The notes under the pieces were generated by a model. That model was not told the origin of the DNA. It was given only the letters and a program-made list of their open reading frames with translations, and searched no databases. Positions 26,054-61,813 of a DNA stretch of 64,000 nt are shown here, in pieces. Within the stretch, counting starts at the first letter, position 1. Each line of letters starts with the position of its first letter. The stretch is from Magallana gigas. Lineage: Eukaryota. Location of the stretch: assembly GCF_963853765.1 (NCBI RefSeq), contig NC_088860.1, forward strand, positions 22,258,001 to 22,322,000. The letters run 5' to 3'. Position numbers and translations under genes: made by a program.

Positions 26054-26205
26054 TAAGGACTCATTTTTGTTAATATTATGAGGTGATAATTTCGGTCGGG
26101 GCGTGATCAAATCTATCAAAAAGCCTTCGAGCTTTATTGGATTTGATCACGCCCCGACCAAACTTATCACCTCATGATACTCAAAGAATTATTTCTTATT
26201 CCTTA
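26054..26205. repeat. Long palindrome (foldback element)
   Basis: Arms ATGAGGTGATAATTTCGGTCGGGGCGTGATCAAATC and GATTTGATCACGCCCCGACCAAACTTATCACCTCAT, extending to TAAGGA..TCCTTA. Confidence 0.8.
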
Positions 26206-26839: not shown

Positions 26840-27470
26840 AATCAAAGTACTGAAGAACTGACGGGAGTTGATTTTGTCGATGTTTATTTATTTTAAAATC
26901 AATAATATGTTATTTTGCATGACAAGTACATGTAGTTTCTAATTTGTATTACGCACATTTTTATAATATGAATTTTTGGACTTTTTCGACAAGAATGTCT
27001 AGAAATCCCATATGAATCATGTTAAATAATATTTAAAGATAAAATTAATTCAATCAAACTATGTATCAGTAATAGAAATATTTCTCGAAAATTGTATGGA
27101 TCCAAGCAATATTGAACTCTAGTCTCGTTCAACCAAACGCTCGGCTGACACCGTAAATCTCCGACAAGGATTTACGGAGACAGCCGAGCGTCGAGTTGAA
27201 CGAGACTATATTGAATTCTTGCGTAGGAATACATACGACTACAAAAAATATTTAAATTGTTCGTACCATTTAAAATCTGAATATTTTCAAGGTATTTATA
27301 AATAAGTTTCCTTGAAAAAAAATGCTTTAGCATACATTACATCGAATTTATCGATTATTTTCAAGAACTAAGTCTTGTCAGCAGCAATGATTTGTGCTGA
27401 GGTCCAAACACTGTTTCACTTTCGGTTTGTCTGAGTAACTGCATAGGAGAGTTGATTAAAATCAACTCCC
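26840..27470. mobile_element. Interspersed repeat, copy 2 (matches 20790-21445)
   Basis: Direct sequence match, including the nested hairpin MITE. Confidence 0.8.
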
Positions 27471-52762: not shown

Positions 52763-55700
52763 TCACTTTAAGGAATAGTTAAACTGGTTTCCAAATCGAT
52801 CCCGGATTCTTTTGTAGGCAAGATTATCCATGACTTCATTCACTCTCTTCATGGCAGACCTGAAATAATTATAAAATGACCTTAGCTATATAAATCATTC
52901 CTTGCATGAAGGTCTATAAAAAGGTTCAAAAGTGTCATGGAAAATTTTATAAAGGAGGCTATGTCAGCTTTCTATTTCTAGCAATTAGGTATTATGGTAA
53001 ATAAAAAAGAACATTTCCTTTCATGTTTTAGCCTTGGAATTAAATTTAATTTGCATATTTTTTCTACTGTACATTTTTTATACAAGCACTGTTTTTTTTC
53101 TAAGGTTATAATATACTAAAATTGACCTCAATTATCAAGCTACATGCATGCTTAACAAATAATTTCATGTGCCCTTAAATAATGTGTATGATTTGTCCTA
53201 TTTCAAAGAATCATCTATTGCAAAACATGGTAACACCTCAATGAAATCCACTGCTGAACAAATGTATGCTGTAGGCCACACCAATATAATTTCTTGTTCG
53301 TTGGACCCCATGCGCTCGTATTTAAATAAAACTATACAAATAATATCATTATTGATTTCCTGCATCCAGGAAATTCTGCGCTGTTTTCTGTTCTATTTCT
53401 GCTCTATTTTTCGTATTTTAAATAGTTTTAAATCATAAATTAGAAACAAGTAGAAAAAATATAACTGTTTGCATCAATTCATTTATGTACCGCTGAAAAA
53501 TTTTGGCTACAAAAAATAATAGTTTTATTATTTACCAGTAATTGCTCGCCCGCGTGTACCTTTTTTCATTGGCTGTCCGACAAACAAGAAATTATATTGG
53601 TGTGGCCCTAGTTACATGTTATAACAGTCAACTATGCACACTGCACTCACTTATTGAGGACTTTTTTCTCCAGTCTTGTCCTGGCGGTGTTTTCTACTAC
53701 ATTAATGTCTGTCAGGTTGGGATATTTCGGTTCTTTACTTTTCTTCCCTTTTCCTTTTCCCTTGCCTTTCTTTTTCTTGGATCCTAGATCCACCCCTAAA
53801 GCACCTTCAATGTCAGCCTGTAATTCTGGGTCCTGCCAGTCATTTAATTCCTCTACAAAACCACGTTTTCACAGAGTTGATATATGTATTGATGTACATG
53901 TACGATACAGAGGAGAAACAACTTTTGCATCAATAAAAATTATCTTATATCCACTTATCAAGATGCAAAAAAAAACCCAAAAAAAACTTGATCGTACAAC
54001 TTGAATTTTAGTTCAAAATTGTCCCATCTTCAAATTTTATTTTTTTTTATTTTTCAAGAGATGAACTGACATATGGTGTTGTGTTACATGTATGAGTTAC
54101 CCTCTAACTGTCCCTGAGTACTTGTTGACGCCATATTTTGTTGACCTGGCTCAGACGGAATGCCATATTCATCTCTGCCAATGATTTTCCCATGGAAAGG
54201 ACACTGTAGATTAACAAGAGATTCTCATGTTACAAACAAACTCCTGCAAAATTTCACTAGGGCACTGGTCATGCATACCAGATAATGCAACCCATAATGC
54301 TAATGAAAACCAACTTTTAATGACATGCGTACATGTAAGTTCTGCAGAGTTTGCTTACCGGTAGCAGAGCATGCAACACTTGCCAAAAGTTGTGTTTTAG
54401 AGATACGGAATTTTGACAAGAGTTCCTTGGTGCTCACTCTGCTTATTGGGGCTGCATTCAAGATCGTAGCTGCTACGTAATTGAACGGTAATCTAGCCTA
54501 GTCGCTAGGTAGATAATTGTAGCCTAAATATTTTATGCTAAGCATCAAATTCAAGATGGCCACCTTAGTTACCACTTTGTTACAAACATGAAATCTATTC
54601 ACTTAGTGATATTTTGTTCATCCTTTAAGTTACCGAGTATAATGAATTTTAACATGCATATTACCGATTGAAATTAACAAATTATGTCGATGTAATTAGT
54701 CTTTAGTTGAATATTTCCAACTTCAAATCTGATACCTAGCGGTCCATTCACTAGACCTAGATATCTATGACCTAGCGGCTAGGCTAGCTGCTACAATCTT
54801 GAACGCAGCCCATGCAGGTCTTTAGATGTAATTGTCATTGCAAACAATGGTATGTAAACATGAGTGAGGAATACATGAGGAATAGTTTAATACAAACATT
54901 ACTGTGAACAACTTTAATGATGACAAAGATTAACAAAAAAATTCATTTTATACAAAAGTTGGTTTAAAGTAAAATTAAAAAAAAGAAAATTAACCAAAAT
55001 TTTTATGTTCATTTTATGCATGATATACCAGTACATATATTTAACATTCACACAGTCTATTTTACCTTGACACGATCCATTCTTTCACATAAACTGCCAT
55101 TAGGAAGTGGAGCACGGCACTTCCACTTCACAGGTTCAAATTTTCCCACAAAAGGAATGGTTCTCTTCGTCAGTTCTCCTATATTGTTCTGAAATTATGA
55201 TAAAATTATCATCACCAATTATTACAATTATTACTCTCGATCTGTTTCTGTGACTGAAGTCACTTTAAAAGCTGCTGAAAAAACCATGTAGCAATGAAAG
55301 AAAAAGTGAGCAAGCTCATAATATACCCCATGCTTTCCCATTTCTTGACAATGATACACATAATAAATAGCAAAGTTTGCATTAAATACACAAAATAATT
55401 TGATAAAATTCATAACTTGCAAAAAATCATCAGATCATAACTTCTTGCAAATATGCACATCTATTCATTTGTCTTTAACACCAAAAAAATTTAAATTCAA
55501 AAAAGGGCCAAAACTCCCTTAAAAATAAAGGAATTTAAATTTCCTGGTAATACGCACACCTACACATCGTGTCCTACATATAAATACCTAGTTTCACTAA
55601 ATTCTATGCTGCGGTTTAGGAGAGCTGCATTTACAAATTTCATTACTATACATGTGTTCATTATATGGCCAAAATTTTAAGTTCATAAGGACCAAAATTC

Positions 55701-58700
55701 CCAGAGAAATAATGGAATTGGTATTTCATGGTATTAAGCATATGCTTGTACACATTATGTCCTAAATACCAGGTACCTAAAAAATTTCATGAAAGTTGTG
55801 CTTACATAAAAACAGAACTGAAGGACTGACTGACAGACAGGTAAAAAAAACATTATACCTGGGGTATAATAAGCTCTTACAAGTCAATATGCATATCTAC
55901 ATGTAAATGCTACTCACATGATCAGTTTTGCAATGTTCGACATCATTGGAAGACCAGAATTGGTGAAGGGAATCATATCTAAAATAGAATAGAAGCAAAA
56001 TAAGATTTATGGTAATACATATTCAAAATGCCTTTAATAATTACTGGTATGGAACATCAATTCAGCCATATCAATCACTTGATACTGTGTACATGAAAAG
56101 ACTTATTTGGAAAGTGAGAATATTTAACAGTTAAAATGTATTTACCGTACTAGATAGATTGTACAGTGGTGGATTTGAAAGTTGTAACATACAAGCTGAA
56201 GCATCTTTTCTCTGTTGCACAAATATTACTGGTAAATTTTGTTTTACCCAGCAATATCAAATGCTGTAAAGCTAATAAAAAGGAGTGAGTGGGCTTACTT
56301 AATAATCTGTGGAGCCTCAATTTTATTAGGATTTTCCCAATGTTCCAAATCGACTCCAAAAGAAATAACAGGGGCACTACCGAGCAACTTTTCTTTCCGA
56401 ATTCCAGCACCAGCTTGGGTTTTATCAGCGGTAGTTGTACTTGTGGAAGGTGAAGACGAGTTCCTGCTAGATAAAGACACAGAAGGTAGAAATAAAAATT
56501 TATCGTTCCATCTTCTGTAAATCAAGTATACATGTACGTATAATATGCAAAATTAATATCTTCAAGATTTGCGAACAACCCCTGCTCATGGATAATTATC
56601 GTCGCAGACAACTGGTAACAGAAAATGTTCTGACGTTGATACATGTGTTAATATAGCGGTATTTTGGACTGGTTAGCAGAAACTGATAGGTAGTATTAAA
56701 CACATTACATAAATAATATTGCTTAAAAATGTACATTTCAAAGACATTTTATTGTATACAAAATATTAAGTCAGCTCAAAATGTACTCAATGTGGTATAC
56801 CTTTCACTCTCAGCCTCTGCTTTGATTCTCTTGAGATTTGCAACCATTGTGGTAGGATCTTTCTCATCATGTTCCAGAAGCTCATTCTGAATGCTCCATG
56901 AAGCCTTCACAAAGCTCCGCTTGGCCCCAGCACCTGACGTGCTAGGTTTGACTGCTGTGCTGCTAGCTGTGCTTGGTGGTTTCTTAGATATGGAGACAGC
57001 TGGTTGTTTCTTTAAGGAGGATGAACCTTGACCTAGAAAATCATCTAATTCATAAGCATCAAAATGCTGTAAATCACATTTTTTATTAGAAAAATATTTT
57101 ATTTTGTGATTTATCGATGATACAATATCTTGCAGCAACCTAAATTCACAATCCAGGTTTTTTTCATTGAAAATAGCATTCAATACAAGAGATGTTCAAT
57201 GACTGATTCACATTGAAATGTATTCGCCCTGACAAAGTTCTCGCAACAGCAATCATAAAATGGAAGACAAAGCATAATTACTGGTACATGTAATTTTTAA
57301 TAATCTTACATTGATGTATTAGAAACTAAGAGATAAAAATGTACATGTTCATAAACTTTTTAGGATTTTTTTTGTAATGGCATAGTCAATTACAGATACT
57401 TCAATTCCATACCTGATTCTTTTTTCAGCATTTCAGGTACCTCTTCCTCGTATCCCTCTTTTTCAGGTACATCTTCAAAGTCGTCATCACTTTCATCTAT
57501 AGAAAAACACAACATTCAACAACTTTGTCAACTGCTTTTATTGTCATCTGCATCATGTAAAAAAAAACTCCTCTTTGGAAAAAGAAAATCTTACCATCAC
57601 TATTTTTATTTTGCTCCTCAAGTGGCACCACTTTAAGATCATAGAATTTGTTCTTGATCTCTCGCAGCTGAGATTTAAGGTCAATAATTCTTTTGATGTC
57701 TTCCTCTTTTCCTCCATGTTTGGATAGAACCTTGATCATTACAAAGATAAGGAAAAAATATTCATTACGAGAAATTCAAGACTCTTCTGGCATAGTGATA
57801 CCCAATTTAAAATTTCACTAATGCATCAATATGAAGCATTTTCAGAATTTTAAATCCACACCTGAAAACTGCCAAAATTCATGTAATCTTCTCATATTTT
57901 TAAACTACTGATACATGCATTTCTCAGATAGATGAGGAAGGTGAAACTCTAAACAGATTGAAATTGATACATGTATAATTTTTCTTGCATAAAGTGGTAT
58001 TGAAACAGGTATATGTTTAATTTTTCTCACATGAAGTACTGAATGAATATTTTTTCCTTATCTTTGTAATGATCAAGGTTCTATCCAAACATGGAGGAAA
58101 AGAGGAAGACATCAAAAGAATTATTGACCTTAAATCTCATGAAGTATTGAAACAGGTACATGTATATTTTTTCTTCCATAAAGTGGTATTAAAACCAGTA
58201 CATATATACATGTTTGTATAAATAATCCATAAATACATTATTTGGATCATACTGAATTACCAACAAGCTTAAGGCACCTACTCATATGCATTGAGTGACA
58301 ATGGGCTGTTGTTTTTAATGATCAATGACTGAGACTGTCGGACACATACCTGTAACCAGTGAGTCACACTGGGCTGGTGTTTGGTACTGATCAGCCTATA
58401 GTGGTCCTTCAGAGTGGTCAGCACCGGGAGGTTGTCCTCGTTCTCCTCCAGCTGTACCGGCCCCTGGTGGAGGTCGATGGCGATGCTGTACTGGTGGTTC
58501 CTCAGTCCGTGCTCCTGTACAAAACCTCCCACCTCCTCCACCTCCTCAAAGTCATCCTCAGAAGACCCCTCCCTAACACTGGCCTCGTCCCCAAGTACTT
58601 CTGTATTTTTAAGTTCACTTTCTATCTTTTCTACAACTCCATGTTTTTCTCTGCATTCTGTCACATCTCTCATGGAATTGCCTGAACAAGTTGAATTTGA

Positions 58701-61687
58701 ACTGTTTTCTGGATCTTTATCTGTACACTTCAATTTCTTGGAATTACTTTGATTCTTTAAACACTTTTCACATTTATTATCTGAGGTAGAAGACTGGCTT
58801 TGCAATGAATTCAGTTTGGCACATTCTATACAATTTAAGGTATCTACTGTACATGTTTCCTGATTTTTTGCATTTCTTAGACAGTCTTTGACGTTAGGTT
58901 CACTAGATGATTCAACACCAAGAAAGAATTCATCTGGAGTTGGTAAAAGTATACTGAAACAGTTTTCTACTTCCGTAAGGCAGGTTTTGATATCTGGTAC
59001 AGTTTCTGCAATGATAACAAACTTTTAAAATAAGAGTACAAATACCTTGGTACATGGTTATGATGTATCAAACAAAAACTTGATTGAAACAAAATTTATT
59101 AGGTTCATAAATACCACTTTAAAAAAAATCTGGATTTTTTTTTTTATCCGTACCATAAATCTGCCTTTTTATATATAGACATATTTAAATAGTCTTGAGG
59201 TGTTAATGTTACATTAAGCCTTTCAACAAACTGCTTGGCTTAGTGGATCCACAGAGACATACTTAGGTTACTTTGAGGTAAAGGTGTTTGAGACACCGTT
59301 GCACCGGTACAACCTTTTTTTAATTTGATCTCAACTTGTATACGTTATTTATTCCATTATATATATCGTGGCCAAAATTGCAATAACTTCAAAAGATGCA
59401 TGGATACCATCAAAAAATTTCTTTTTATATATTTTATTTCATTTATAAAGTTTGAAGGATAGATGTCATTTTTAGGATGAAAAAAATACTTTGAGGCTGG
59501 GGATCAGAATACCTTAAGTACGATAGAAAAAAAACCACATCCTTAATTTACCTTCAATTTCTTTCAGGACTTTATTTATCCTCTCCTTGTTGATTCTTTG
59601 TCTTCTTTCTTCTCGTTCTCTCTCTCTTCTTTGTTCAGCTTCACTTCTGGCCCTTATACCATTGAAGTCAACCTGTGAATGCACACATGTAGTACAGTAC
59701 ATGTACATGATCAACTGATCTACAGAGATATTGTTAAGAATGCTAGTTCATGTACATGTACATGTCTCAAGTAAATGTATATATTTTTTAATATACATGT
59801 AATCGAATATCTTTTAATTAATATACTGACCACTTTTTTGTGTTGTAAATTTTTCATTTATTCTGTCCTGGATTATATTTCATGCATTATCTCTAAATCA
59901 TAATAGGAAAATGCATGTACTAATATGTTATCAATAAGCAAAATTTTGCAGCATTCTATTTGCTTTGTTAATAAAGCAAACAGATTAGTTTAAATACGGT
60001 AATGGAAAGTTAAAATCTAATGGTCTGTTTCTAAGCTGAGCTTTGTTGAACTCATATATTGGGTTATGAGGGTAACTGCAACTTTATGTGATTTGCTACC
60101 TCATGATATTATAAACTTTTGTCCTCATAAAAAGAAATTGGGGTACCTTTTTACATTTCTGGAGAAAATTAAACCCCAGGGACAGCTTCTTGTAGGCCTC
60201 TCCAAACTTGTCGTTCCACTGCTGAATCGCTCGGAGGCTAGAAGCCTTTAGAGTGTTGGCAGCCGCTTTAGGGGGAGGTAAGGGCTGATCGAAATCGACC
60301 TCTGTCGAAAAAAAAAAATACACATTTACAATATCCACTACCTCCCTTGGCTCTAAATTCCATGACATGCAAGATTAACAAGTTTTTGAGACATACCAAC
60401 AGTTAGTTCCAGAAATGTTTGTAAATCACAGAGAAGCAGCTCTCTAAAAACATGAGACCGATTAAAGAGTTCATCCATCATCTGGAATGCAGAGAGTCTG
60501 ATTTCTGAATGTTCCTTTTCCAGCTGAGTCATCAACATGTGGTATGCTTCATTCACGTACATATCTGATTTCCTGTGAAAAAGTATTTTTAAAGATTTTT
60601 CCATTTACTAGAAAAAATAGTGCCTATAAAATGCACTAAAATGGCAATATGTATAGAAAGACTACGAAAAATATTGTAGCAATTTAATTAAATCATTTTG
60701 GATTGATATTAACAATTGGTTCATAAGGCATTTATTTTATACATAACGTTGAAACAGTGACCTTAATATATGATAATGAATTTTACTTTGCTCAAAATCT
60801 TTCTATAAATGATATGAGAACACAAATATTTACACTATAAGCCTTTGTTTTCCCTCTGATTGAAATGTCACACTTTCATTCGTTTAAACATAATATGTGA
60901 TTGCCTCATATATCTCTATATTTGTTCGGTGAAAAATAATATTAGGCAATATGGTATTTGGAGTAGTTGCCCTTTGAAATTCTTTAAAATTAAAGTAGTT
61001 GCCGTTAGAATATTGACGTCACATTGTTTTGTTTGGAGCAGAACAAAATGGCAGCGTCGAAATTTGCTCAAATCTCTGCAGAGAAAGAGAGAAAACATCT
61101 AAAATTGAATAGCAACAAAACATTGTAAGTAAACATGGGTAAAGCAAAGATTTTTAAAGAGTAAATGAAAGGTGAGATTGAAAATTTTGAAGAGTTTAAA
61201 TGAGTTTAGTTGGACGAGATGTTAGGCATCTTGTACATGGCTTTGCGCAGATCATCGCTATTTGTGAATAAATATGTCGCTTGATCGTCCTCGGGAAAAA
61301 CAAAATACTTTTAAGGTGAGTTACTGACTCACTACGGAAATATATCGGACTGATCAATCTCATAGATGGCTCGGCTTCACCTTGCCATCTATGAGATTGA
61401 TCAGCCCAATATATTTCCGTAGTGAGTCAGTAACTAACCTAATATAAAGTAATAATATCATTCCCTTTTTTAAATACAGAAAAGGTGAACTGTATGATAA
61501 AAAATAGCACTTTGATAAACTTTTATTTTTATGCACACTAGACCTACTTGCAGATACTTTTGAATTTTTTCATTGTGTCTGCATTTAGCACAGGTTTTCC
61601 ACTGGTGGTCAGCTGCTCTACATATTTCTGCATTTCCTGCTGCAGTGTATGGTCCAGACATTCTGTGCCTGGCGTTTCTGTTGCCAT
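52763..61687 (-). CDS. UVSSA: UV-stimulated scaffold protein A (transcription-coupled NER factor), about 816 aa
   Basis: complement join 61548-61687, 60397-60572, 60147-60301, 59552-59672, 58350-59005, 57595-57730, 57413-57496, 56801-57032, 56299-56463, 55918-55978, 55066-55188, 54101-54203, 53651-53852, 52763-52859; 2451 nt. VHS-like N-terminus VEQLTTSG...[21 protein letters not shown]...[66 protein letters not shown]. Confidence 0.96.
53272..53610. mobile_element. MITE in UVSSA last intron
   Basis: TIRs TAGGCCACACCAATATAATTTCTTGTT / AACAAGAAATTATATTGGTGTGGCCCTA. Confidence 0.8.
54449..54811. mobile_element. MITE with GGGCTGC ends (PIF/Harbinger-like)
   Basis: TIRs GGGCTGCATTCAAGATCGTAGC / GCTACAATCTTGAACGCAGCCC. 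A related fragment lies at about 39783-39850. Superfamily call is tentative. Confidence 0.7.
55300..55872 (+). mobile_element. HINE-like element with satellite-like core repeats of about 170 bp
   Basis: Head GTGAGCAAGCTCATAATATACCCC (as at 16260); repeated cores with CACATCTA / CACATTATGTCCTAAATACC; (GACT/GACA)n; end CATTATACCTGGGGTATAAT. Confidence 0.7.
58042..58139. repeat. Perfect 98-bp inverted copy of 57669-57766 (UVSSA intron end plus exon 6 start)
   Basis: Base-by-base reverse-complement identity checked by eye. It sits inside a roughly 42-bp minisatellite (57969-58200). Confidence 0.92.
61048..61260 (+). pseudogene. Decayed ORF resembling the N-terminus of Crypton-type tyrosine-recombinase proteins, antisense in UVSSA intron 1
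   Basis: One frame with four in-frame stops: [64 protein letters not shown]. Family assignment rests on a recalled pattern only. Confidence 0.5.
61315..61439. repeat. Near-perfect 125-bp palindrome
   Basis: GGTGAGTTACTGACTCACTACGGAAATATAT..CTGATCAATCTCATAGATGGC / GCCATCTATGAGATTGATCAG..ATATATTTCCGTAGTGAGTCAGTAACTAACC. Confidence 0.85.
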
Positions 61688-61813
61688 CTTCTTCACCTAT
61701 TGTAAACATGCATTCACATATATCAAAAATGTAAAACTTCTTTAAAAAATGTATTTCCAGCATAGAAAAAAAAATCTTAGAAGACAAAACAGTAGAAATA
61801 TTAGATCATTAAA

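What the first reader, a model, noticed from the sequence alone, without database searches (positions are those of the whole stretch)
57669..58139. Perfect 98-bp inverted duplication able to base-pair over a UVSSA 3' splice site
Seen: 58042-58139 is the exact reverse complement of 57669-57766, which is the last 36 nt of intron 5 (pyrimidine tract and AG) plus the first 62 nt of exon 6; the spacer is 275 bp. The copy interrupts a roughly 42-bp minisatellite and is flanked by a duplicated CATGAAGTA(C/T)TGAA, with short microhomology at the junctions. Inference: a very recent templated insertion (template switch or polymerase-theta-type repair). In the pre-mRNA it could form a 98-bp stem masking the acceptor; skipping this 136-nt exon shifts the frame and would remove the C-terminal conserved domain and zinc finger. 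It is also a likely ADAR or Dicer substrate. This could be a natural splice-modulating allele of a TC-NER gene in a UV-exposed animal.
Basis: partly seen in the sequence, partly recalled or inferred. Interest (0 to 1): 0.72.

Follow-up and report, generated by a model that had tools for sequence, protein, structure and literature searches.

The report
Inverted acceptor copy in oyster UVSSA intron
One version of an oyster DNA-repair gene (UVSSA) carries a freshly made, back-to-front copy of one of its own splice-acceptor regions about 300 bases away in the same intron; the insertion is real and varies between animals, but whether it disturbs splicing is still untested.

Summary
58042-58139 is the exact reverse complement of 57669-57766: 98 nt, 275-nt spacer, and these are the only two copies in the 564-Mb genome. 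RNA contigs fix the gene structure on the minus strand. The source is the last 36 nt of intron 5 plus the first 62 nt of exon 6 of a single-copy UVSSA gene.

It is not an assembly artefact. One DNA run (X4) holds the left junction in a 218-nt contig with no differences, at about half the local depth. It is polymorphic. An "empty" allele (58037 + G + 58144) is seen in four runs and two further public contigs, and it restores the minisatellite unit. One empty haplotype differs from the reference at 5 of 935 nt, so the insertion is young.

The anatomy is a 94-98-nt inverted local copy with 2-nt microhomologies and a 14-nt flanking duplication. This fits a foldback or template-switch templated insertion, which is a known class of mutation.

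Folding predicts that all 98 positions pair, and acceptor accessibility falls from 0.47 to below 0.01. Skipping exon 6 would give a stop in exon 7. No RNA from a known carrier could be examined, so the splicing and editing consequences remain inference. The only RNA run laid showed only the empty allele, and there exon 6 is included. Interest is moderate.

The parts
57669..57766 (-). Source segment: last 36 nt of UVSSA intron 5 (candidate branch sites, pyrimidine tract, AG) plus the first 62 nt of exon 6
   Evidence: Inverted-repeat arm. Exon/intron boundary at 57730/57731 from the RNA joint 57728>58348 cut +2.
58042..58139 (+). Inverted copy of the source segment. It reads gene-sense on the + strand, so it is antisense within the minus-strand pre-mRNA. 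The outer 2 nt on each side (AA, CA) are microhomology, so 94 nt are unambiguously new synthesis.
   Evidence: Only two copies in the genome.
58038..58143 (.). The 106 nt that are absent from the empty allele, which has a single G in their place
   Evidence: Joint 58037>58144 'skips 106' with G between, in X4, X5, X9 and X15 (tables 5 and 5c). Same state in L007 and L011.
58030..58043 (.). Left copy of the 14-nt flanking direct repeat CATGAAGTACTGAA
   Evidence: (family D4)
58138..58151 (.). Right copy of the 14-nt flanking direct repeat CATGAAGTATTGAA (one C/T mismatch). Both copies lack the GGT present in empty alleles.
57767..58041 (.). 275-nt spacer, which would be the loop of the predicted RNA stem
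57957..58229 (.). Degenerate ~42-bp minisatellite (3-4 units) interrupted by the insertion. It is a local hotspot of indels and transposon insertions.
   Evidence: family D1. Units printed. Indels at 57911 and 58007 and loose ends at 58046 and 58228.
57595..57730 (-). UVSSA exon 6, 136 nt
   Evidence: RNA joints; translation
57731..58349 (-). UVSSA intron 5: 619 nt in this allele, 514 nt in the empty allele; GT..AG
   Evidence: joint 57728>58348 cut +2, ends CT..AC on the + strand
58350..59024 (-). UVSSA exon 5. The 3' end is fixed by RNA. The 5' end was not fixed; RNA contigs reach 59012.
57413..57496 (-). UVSSA exon 7. It encodes an acidic run followed by F-x-x-V, the pattern of the TFIIH p62-binding motif. 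It holds the premature stop if exon 6 is skipped.
   Evidence: Motif pattern from PMC5727438.
52766..61696 (-). Approximate extent of the coding part of the single-copy UVSSA gene
   Evidence: Open frames. Pfam UVSSA_N at 61547-61696, 60356-60604 and 60099-60374; DUF2043 at 55060-55194 and 54087-54224. No second locus in the genome.

Best explanation
This is a segregating insertion allele in intron 5 of the single-copy UVSSA gene of an oyster. It was made in one event of foldback or template-switch DNA synthesis.

Origin. A 3' end inside a small intronic minisatellite primed on its own strand about 300 nt away through 2 nt of homology. It copied 94-98 nt across the intron-5 acceptor and the start of exon 6 in reverse complement. 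It then rejoined through another 2 nt of homology, leaving a 14-nt duplication of the target.
- Shown: the structure, its uniqueness in the genome, read support for it, the existence of the ancestral empty allele, and the youth of the insertion.
- Inferred: the enzymology. A replication template switch and a foldback-primed repair of a staggered break both fit.

Consequence (inferred only). The gene is transcribed from high to low coordinates, so the antisense copy is made first. About 275 nt later, the candidate branch sites, pyrimidine tract, AG and 62 nt of exon 6 emerge and can zip into a perfect 98-bp, AU-rich duplex. That duplex should hinder U2AF/U2 binding and attract dsRNA-binding proteins such as ADAR. 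The expected result is less exon-6 inclusion, giving a frameshift and a stop in exon 7, with loss of the TFIIH-binding motif and DUF2043, and/or intron retention and hyper-editing from this allele.

I put about 0.35 on a measurable splicing effect. The alternative is that helicases, RNA-binding proteins or editing neutralise the duplex.
For: Structure and uniqueness.

Gene and exon map.

Read support for the insertion:
- X4 contig 57854-58071 (218 nt, 0 differences, depth 10) crosses the left junction by 34 nt. Beside it lies an empty-allele contig at depth 11.3 (tables 5 and 8).
- X4 is not the reference animal. It shows only non-reference letters at 58398, 58401 and eight other places (table 3).
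- In X4 and X5 contigs break at 57698/57669, the outer edge of the arm. In X9, which has only the empty allele, one contig runs through (table 8).

The empty allele is ancestral. It reads ...CATGAAGTGGTATTGAAAC..., the same as the neighbouring unit boundary CATAAAGTGGTATTGAAAC. It is seen in X4, X5, X9, X15, L007 and L011. A contig about 80% identical, probably from a related species (L012), runs into the next minisatellite unit with no inverted copy there.

Youth: the two arms are identical. The empty haplotype L011 differs from the reference at 5 of 935 nt, and at only 1 within 57552-58526.

Junctions: AA and CA microhomology and a 14-nt flanking repeat. These match published foldback insertions of 2 to ~150 bp with a median microhomology of 2 bp (PMC11724301). 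They also match the four-point template-switch model, which makes perfect hairpins in one step (PMC5453318; PMC8794818).

RNA prediction:
- MFE -292.7 against -162.3 kcal/mol, with 98 of 98 positions paired.
- Mean P(unpaired) of the last 36 intron nt is 0.007 against 0.470.
- Stop after 23 codons of exon 7 if exon 6 is skipped.

Precedent:
- A dsRNA between an exon and its upstream pyrimidine tract, bound by ADAR, blocks U2AF65 and causes skipping of RELL2 exon 3 (review PMC7404189).
- Oysters have ADAR1 with hyper-editing activity (PMC9044936 and PMC6651903; titles and abstracts listed).
Against: No RNA from a known carrier was examined. X15 includes exon 6 normally, but its intronic contig is the empty allele.

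The right junction was not among the contigs printed for X4 or X5. Its presence there rests on my arithmetic on binned depths.

Two details are not explained by a single clean event. There is a C/T mismatch between the two 14-nt flanking repeats. Both repeats also lack the GGT present in every empty allele seen.

The loop is long (275 nt) and the duplex is only 30% G+C. From my own knowledge of the older splicing literature (Eperon et al. 1988, seen here only as a reference in PMC7404189), hairpins with long loops are often ineffective in vivo.

The allele persists in at least two animals, which argues against a strongly dominant harmful effect.
Confidence: 0.8

Rival explanations
1. The insertion is real but functionally silent. 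In vivo the duplex is prevented or undone by co-transcriptional protein loading, RNA helicases, or ADAR editing that loosens it. Exon 6 is then spliced normally and the allele is a neutral intronic polymorphism.
For: The allele is found in more than one animal. The loop is long (275 nt) and the duplex is 70% A+U. This oyster's introns are full of indel and transposon polymorphism, including within 200 nt of this site (tables 4 and 7). No abnormal joint is seen in the RNA run laid.
Against: A 98-bp perfect duplex (about -162 kcal/mol for the arms alone) is far longer than structures known to alter splice-site use. It covers the candidate branch sites, pyrimidine tract, AG and 62 nt of exon at once. 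The RNA run laid showed no contig of the insertion allele, so it does not test this.
Confidence: 0.55
2. The copy was made from RNA, not DNA. A piece of the gene's own nascent, unspliced transcript was reverse-transcribed at a staggered break (LINE-type target-primed reverse transcription, or RNA-templated break repair) and inserted with a 14-nt target-site duplication.
For: A 14-nt flanking duplication is in the size range typical of target-primed insertions (own knowledge). The + strand of the insert has the sense of the pre-mRNA and includes intron sequence, as nascent RNA would. Retroelements and other transposons are active around this site.
Against: The insert has no poly(A) or retroelement tail and no retroelement part, and the fragment is internal to the transcript. 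The inverted orientation, the ~300-nt distance and the identity to the arm on the same assembled haplotype all follow directly from DNA foldback, but would be coincidental for an RNA template.
Confidence: 0.08
3. The event is tied to a transposon. An element of the CGGCACGTC...(CCCCAAGGAA)n family first sat at this site, and the inverted copy is filler DNA laid down when the element was lost. On this reading the X5 allele is the precursor, not a derivative.
For: In X5 the non-empty allele shares the nine insertion-specific letters 58038-58046 and then continues into the end of a family with at least 64 genomic copies (table 7). A related loose end lies at 58228 in X4. Break repair after excision is a classic source of templated filler (own knowledge).
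Against: The arm is perfectly collinear with its template across 58046/58047. That is expected if the element landed inside an existing arm, but not if it was replaced. Depth arithmetic leaves about 317 depth-positions in 58077-58143 of X5 that only a contig holding unique right-junction sequence can supply, and no loose end is listed before 58140. No terminal inverted repeat was found within 1.5 kb of the element's end, so an excising cut-and-paste element is not indicated.
Confidence: 0.1
4. Assembly or consensus artefact: a chimeric or foldback read was incorporated into the reference.
For: Inverted duplications are a known artefact class. No run holds all sampled words of the stretch; the best share is 0.91.
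Against: An independent set of contigs (X4) holds the left junction with 0 differences at allele-like depth 10, next to the empty allele at 11.3. X4 is not the reference animal. X5, from another study, shares the junction-specific letters.
Confidence: 0.03

Closest known systems
Template-switch mutations (four-point model; Loytynoja & Goldman 2017, PMC5453318; Monttinen & Loytynoja 2022, PMC8794818)
   Same: A nearby segment is copied in reverse complement in one step, creating a perfect hairpin-forming repeat. Returning upstream of the departure point duplicates the interval between the two points, which here is the 14-mer.
   Different: Most described events are short; the largest pattern mentioned in PMC8794818 is 59 bp. 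This one is 94-98 nt, lies 275 nt from its template, and copies a functional splice acceptor plus coding sequence.
Foldback-primed templated inverted insertions at double-strand breaks, and snap-back synthesis in alternative end joining (PMC11724301; PMC4912351; PMC2943611)
   Same: A resected 3' tail folds back on its own strand at a tiny microhomology, is extended, unwinds, and is captured by the other end with about 2 bp of homology. Reported sizes are 2 to ~150 bp.
   Different: Those events were seen at induced breaks in yeast or in vitro, mostly under 14 bp and with loops of tens of nt. Here it is a germline allele in a wild or farmed animal, with a ~275-nt loop. The polymerase is unknown.
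dsRNA between an exon and its upstream pyrimidine tract blocking U2AF65 (RELL2 exon 3 with ADAR; reviewed in PMC7404189)
   Same: Pairing of exon sequence with acceptor-region sequence, bound by a dsRNA-binding protein, hides the 3' splice site and causes exon skipping that leads to an NMD isoform.
   Different: In RELL2 the pairing is short and imperfect, between the exon and its own tract. Here a separate upstream intronic copy pairs perfectly with the tract, AG and exon over 98 bp, and no effect has been measured.
Intronic editing-complementary sequences and docking/selector elements (own knowledge; also the scan note s1-380956 on a conserved acceptor-complement in this oyster's IVD gene)
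   Same: An intronic sequence complementary to an exon or acceptor, able to guide editing or splice choice. This allele looks like the raw, day-one form of such an element.
   Different: Those elements are conserved, short (tens of nt) and imperfect. This one is polymorphic, unselected as far as is known, and perfect.
Inverted Alu pairs causing loop-out exon skipping (bioRxiv 10.1101/2025.03.07.642063)
   Same: Long intronic inverted repeats form RNA stems that change exon inclusion.
   Different: Alu pairs flank the exon and loop it out. Here one arm is the acceptor and exon itself, and neither arm is a transposon.

Membership tests
Templated inverted insertion (template switch / foldback synthesis) | The inserted segment is the exact reverse complement of nearby sequence on the same chromosome | tested here: met
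   98 of 98 complementary, 275 nt away
Templated inverted insertion (template switch / foldback synthesis) | An ancestral allele without the insert exists | tested here: met
   Joint 58037+G+58144 in X4, X5, X9 and X15. L007 and L011 are empty, and the ~80%-identical contig L012 (probably a related species) shows no inverted copy at the site.
Templated inverted insertion (template switch / foldback synthesis) | Microhomology at the switch points | tested here: met
   AA on the left and CA on the right, 2 nt each. This is weak as statistics but equals the published median.
Templated inverted insertion (template switch / foldback synthesis) | One event explains all differences from the ancestor | tested here: inconclusive
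   The 14-nt duplication fits. The C/T mismatch between the duplicates and the missing GGT in both are not explained.
Transposable element / MITE | Multiple dispersed copies with element termini | tested here: not met
   Only the two local copies in 564 Mb. By contrast, the hairpin at 61314-61440 has 745 first-look candidates.
Retrocopy by target-primed reverse transcription | Target-site duplication plus a poly(A) or element 3' tail; usually spliced | tested here: not met
   A 14-nt duplication is present, but there is no tail and intron sequence is included.
Assembly artefact | The junctions are absent from reads or contigs other than the assembly | tested here: not met
   The left junction is in an X4 contig, 0 differences, depth 10. 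Junction letters are also in X5.
Splice-site-masking RNA structure | The complement covers the splice signals and is thermodynamically favoured | tested here: met
   98 of 98 paired in the MFE structure. P(unpaired) is 0.007 against 0.47.
Splice-site-masking RNA structure | Altered splicing that depends on the structure | not testable with these tools
   The RNA run laid shows only the empty allele.
ADAR/Dicer substrate | A-to-G clusters or small RNAs mapping to the arms in carriers | not tested
   Only the precondition is met: a long perfect intramolecular dsRNA is predicted. ADAR1 hyper-editing is reported in oysters (PMC9044936).
UVSSA | UVSSA_N domain and C-terminal DUF2043 | tested here: met
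   PF20867 scores 26.4, 80.7 and 60.4 bits (cut-off 23.8). PF09740 scores 47.2 and 26.8 bits (cut-off 25). Single locus in the genome.
UVSSA | Acidic run followed by F-x-x-V (TFIIH p62-binding motif) | tested here: met
   Exon 7 encodes [10 protein letters not shown]. The pattern is as described for human residues 400-411 in PMC5727438. Binding itself was not tested.

The most novel reading that the evidence does not exclude
The insertion allele is a natural, segregating hypomorph of transcription-coupled repair. Its 98-bp exon-intron duplex suppresses exon-6 recognition and/or is hyper-edited in vivo. It would then catch the first day in the life of an intronic acceptor-complement, the kind of element that selection later trims into editing-complementary or docking sequences. 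It would also offer a ready-made in vivo test of how long-range perfect duplexes act on splicing in a lophotrochozoan.
Probability: 0.3. Interest if true: 0.6.

Novelty: new member of a known kind. Interest (0 to 1): 0.4.

Why it matters
This is a clean, dated example of a one-step mutation that creates a long perfect RNA hairpin out of functional gene sequence, and both the ancestral and derived alleles are still segregating.

If the duplex affects splicing, oysters carry a natural loss- or reduction-of-function allele of the only UVSSA gene. It could be genotyped with a simple PCR (a 105-bp size difference) and tested for UV sensitivity. The locus would also show how intronic elements complementary to acceptors are born.

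If the duplex has no effect, the allele is still a useful negative control. It would show how well cells tolerate a 98-bp intramolecular dsRNA across a splice site.

Tried and rejected
1. Looked for the insertion allele in other public data through gene calls.
   - Exact look-ups of the 50-aa and 32-aa ORFs that cross the right and left junctions found nothing.
   - Exact look-ups of the product expected from a contig cut at the arm edge also found nothing.
   - A word search with the junction ORF returned only the normal exon-6 context, P0011-P0015.
   - These blanks are not evidence of absence. k-mer assemblies break at the repeat, so carriers cannot yield such ORFs.

2. Scanned JGI metagenome contigs for the right junction and, as a control, for the empty allele. 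Neither is there, so that collection simply lacks the locus.

3. Exon-5 homologues P0001-P0010 are other species at about 50-74% identity. I did not follow them, because introns would not align.

4. Tested whether the minisatellite is part of a dispersed element. It is not; only local matches were found.

5. Looked for a terminal inverted repeat of the transposon seen in X5. None was found within 1.5 kb.

6. Rejected a MITE, a retrocopy and an assembly artefact (see the membership tests).

7. I did not build or search a joined, spliced UVSSA protein. For that reason full-length orthologues and other assemblies of this species could not be fetched through the protein route.

Full report
**What is there**

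The window holds a perfect inverted repeat. Its arms are 57669-57766 and 58042-58139, 98 nt each, with 275 nt between them (identity re-checked). A search of the whole 564-Mb assembly finds only these two copies, so neither arm belongs to a repeat family.

For comparison, the 64-kb window has only three other inverted repeats of 40 nt or more. All three are short-loop hairpins. The one I tested, 61314-61440, belongs to a family with hundreds of copies. A 98-nt perfect match cannot be chance.

**The gene**

Open frames on the minus strand between about 61700 and 52770 carry Pfam UVSSA_N on three exons and DUF2043 on two, all above the curated cut-offs. The family has no second locus in the genome.

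A 1393-nt spliced RNA contig from run X15 fixes the local structure:
- Exon 5 ends at 58350.
- Intron 5 is 57731-58349.
- Exon 6 is 57595-57730 (136 nt).
- Intron 6 is 57497-57594.
- Exon 7 is 57413-57496.

Exon 7 encodes [10 protein letters not shown], the acidic-F-x-x-V pattern of the TFIIH p62-binding motif described for human UVSSA (PMC5727438).

Exons were handled one by one.

**Is it real?**

Run labels show that the animal is an oyster. I laid four runs on 56700-59100.

- X4 holds a 218-nt contig (57854-58071) with no differences from the window. It crosses the left junction by 34 nt at depth 10. Beside it is a second contig, at depth 11.3, that joins 58037 to 58144 with a single G between. 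This is what a heterozygote looks like.
- X4 is not the animal the assembly came from. It shows only non-reference letters at 58398, 58401 and eight other places.
- In X4 and X5 the contigs break at 57698/57669, the outer edge of the arm. That is the graph branch expected when the second copy exists.
- In X9 a single 1217-nt contig runs through that point and across the empty joint.

An assembly artefact is therefore very unlikely.

**Is it polymorphic, and which state is ancestral?**

The empty joint (58037 + G + 58144) appears in all four runs. It also appears in two other public contigs that I reached through the exon-6 open frame: L007 and L011.

The empty allele reads ...CATGAAGTGGTATTGAAAC.... 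This is the same boundary as the neighbouring minisatellite unit, CATAAAGTGGTATTGAAAC. A contig about 80% identical, probably from a related species (L012), runs into the next unit with no inverted copy. The insertion is therefore the derived state.

It is also young. The arms are identical, and the empty haplotype L011 differs from the reference at only 5 of 935 nt, with one difference in the 970 nt nearest the site.

**A third form**

In X5, which comes from another study, the non-empty allele shares the nine insertion-specific letters 58038-58046. It then runs into the end of a dispersed element, CGGCACGTCTTTTAA followed by CCCCAAGGAA repeats, with at least 64 genomic copies (table 7).

My arithmetic on the binned depths leaves about 317 depth-positions in 58077-58143 of X5 that only a contig holding unique right-junction sequence could supply. 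X9 has exactly zero there. I therefore favour, at about 60%, a transposon nested inside the insertion allele. On that reading the allele has been around long enough to be hit again.

The printed tables do not show the right-junction contig itself, for either X4 or X5. This is an inference.

**Anatomy and origin**

The allele reads...CTCA [CATGAAGTACTGAA] [94 nt, TGAATATT...AAATCT] [CATGAAGTATTGAA] ACAGG....

The 98-nt match includes 2 nt on each side (AA, CA) that are shared with the flanks. These are the microhomologies at the two switches.

The geometry is that of a 3' end folding back on its own strand, or of a nascent strand switching to the complementary template. The AA at the end of the left 14-mer pairs with TT at 57765-57766. 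Synthesis then runs down to 57669, and the new end (CA) pairs with the start of the right 14-mer.

This matches two published models:
- Foldback-primed insertions at breaks: 2 to ~150 bp, median junction homology 2 bp (PMC11724301). Snap-back synthesis in alternative end joining is closely related (PMC4912351 and PMC2943611, listed).
- The four-point template-switch model, in which returning upstream of the departure point duplicates the interval (PMC5453318). That model has been shown to create perfect RNA hairpins in a single step (PMC8794818).

The sequence cannot tell these apart, nor name the polymerase.

Two details remain unexplained. The two 14-mers differ at one base (C/T), and both lack the GGT that every empty allele has.

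Two further routes are possible but less economical; they are scored as rivals:
- An RNA-templated route, with nascent pre-mRNA copied at a staggered break.
- A link to loss of the transposon seen in X5.

**What it should do**

The gene is transcribed from high to low coordinates, so the antisense copy is made first and the acceptor region follows about 275 nt later.

Folding 841 nt of pre-mRNA gives -292.7 kcal/mol with the insert and -162.3 without. All 98 positions pair with the copy. The mean probability of being unpaired falls from 0.47 to 0.007 for the last 36 intron nt, and from 0.46 to 0.004 for the first 62 exon nt.

By eye, the candidate branch sites, the pyrimidine tract and the AG all lie inside the duplex.

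Skipping the 136-nt exon shifts the frame, and exon 7 then stops after 23 codons. That is upstream of the TFIIH-binding motif and DUF2043, so the product would be non-functional and the mRNA a likely NMD target.

There is a precedent. dsRNA between RELL2 exon 3 and its upstream pyrimidine tract, bound by ADAR, blocks U2AF65 and causes skipping (review PMC7404189). Oysters have ADAR1 with hyper-editing activity (PMC9044936 and PMC6651903).

All of this is inference. The only RNA run I could lay showed only the empty allele and includes exon 6 normally. The long loop, the A+U-rich stem and the persistence of the allele in several animals all leave room for no effect at all. I put about 0.35 on a measurable effect.

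**Context from the scan**

Earlier notes on this genome report that tandem copies of exon ends plus splice sites are common in its introns (s1-382358, s1-380948, s1-375633). They also report that another gene has a conserved intronic complement of an acceptor (s1-380956). I did not test these. They suggest that copying of splice junctions into introns is frequent in this animal, and that this finding is the inverted, newly born variant.

**Verdict**

The functional part is plausible but untested.

The mutation class and the kind of RNA structure are both known. What is unusual is the length of the duplex, its perfection, and the fact that one arm is a working acceptor of a single-copy repair gene, with both alleles available for comparison. 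Interest is moderate.

Noticed in passing
window 58046 (run X5) and 58228 (run X4); genome copies e.g. L003:1501-2586: A dispersed element ends in CGGCACGTCTTTTAA followed by tandem CCCCAAGGAA units, with at least 64 copies in the genome. It is polymorphically inserted in this intron in X5 at 58046, inside the inverted copy. A related CCCCAAGGAA-repeat end is inserted at 58228 on the other haplotype of X4. No terminal inverted repeat was found within 1.5 kb, and its class was not determined.
   Followed up: partly
window 58268-58274: In run X5, loose contig ends on both sides overlap by 7 nt, with CTCGACAC-like inverted termini. This is the signature of another polymorphic transposon insertion with a 7-bp target duplication in the same intron.
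   Followed up: no
window 58529-58547: The 9-bp tandem repeat CCACCTCCT in UVSSA exon 5 has an in-frame 9-bp deletion allele in run X5 (table 4).
   Followed up: no
window 61314-61440: A hairpin element in UVSSA intron 1, with 57-nt arms (95% complementary) and a 13-nt loop. It belongs to a very abundant family: 745 first-look candidates, with copies about 94% identical on many chromosomes.
   Followed up: partly
window 26065-26188 and 27106-27222: Two further short-loop inverted repeats (54-56-nt arms, 80-82% complementary, loops of 9-12 nt), probably hairpin-type elements.
   Followed up: no
window 57413-57496: UVSSA exon 7 encodes [10 protein letters not shown], so the acidic-F-x-x-V TFIIH p62-binding pattern of human UVSSA appears conserved in a mollusc.
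   Followed up: partly
window 57900-58010: The minisatellite and its left flank carry 6-bp insertion alleles: TACATT after 57911 in X9 and GGTACC after 58007 in X4. Several public contigs end at 58007, consistent with frequent heterozygosity there.
   Followed up: no
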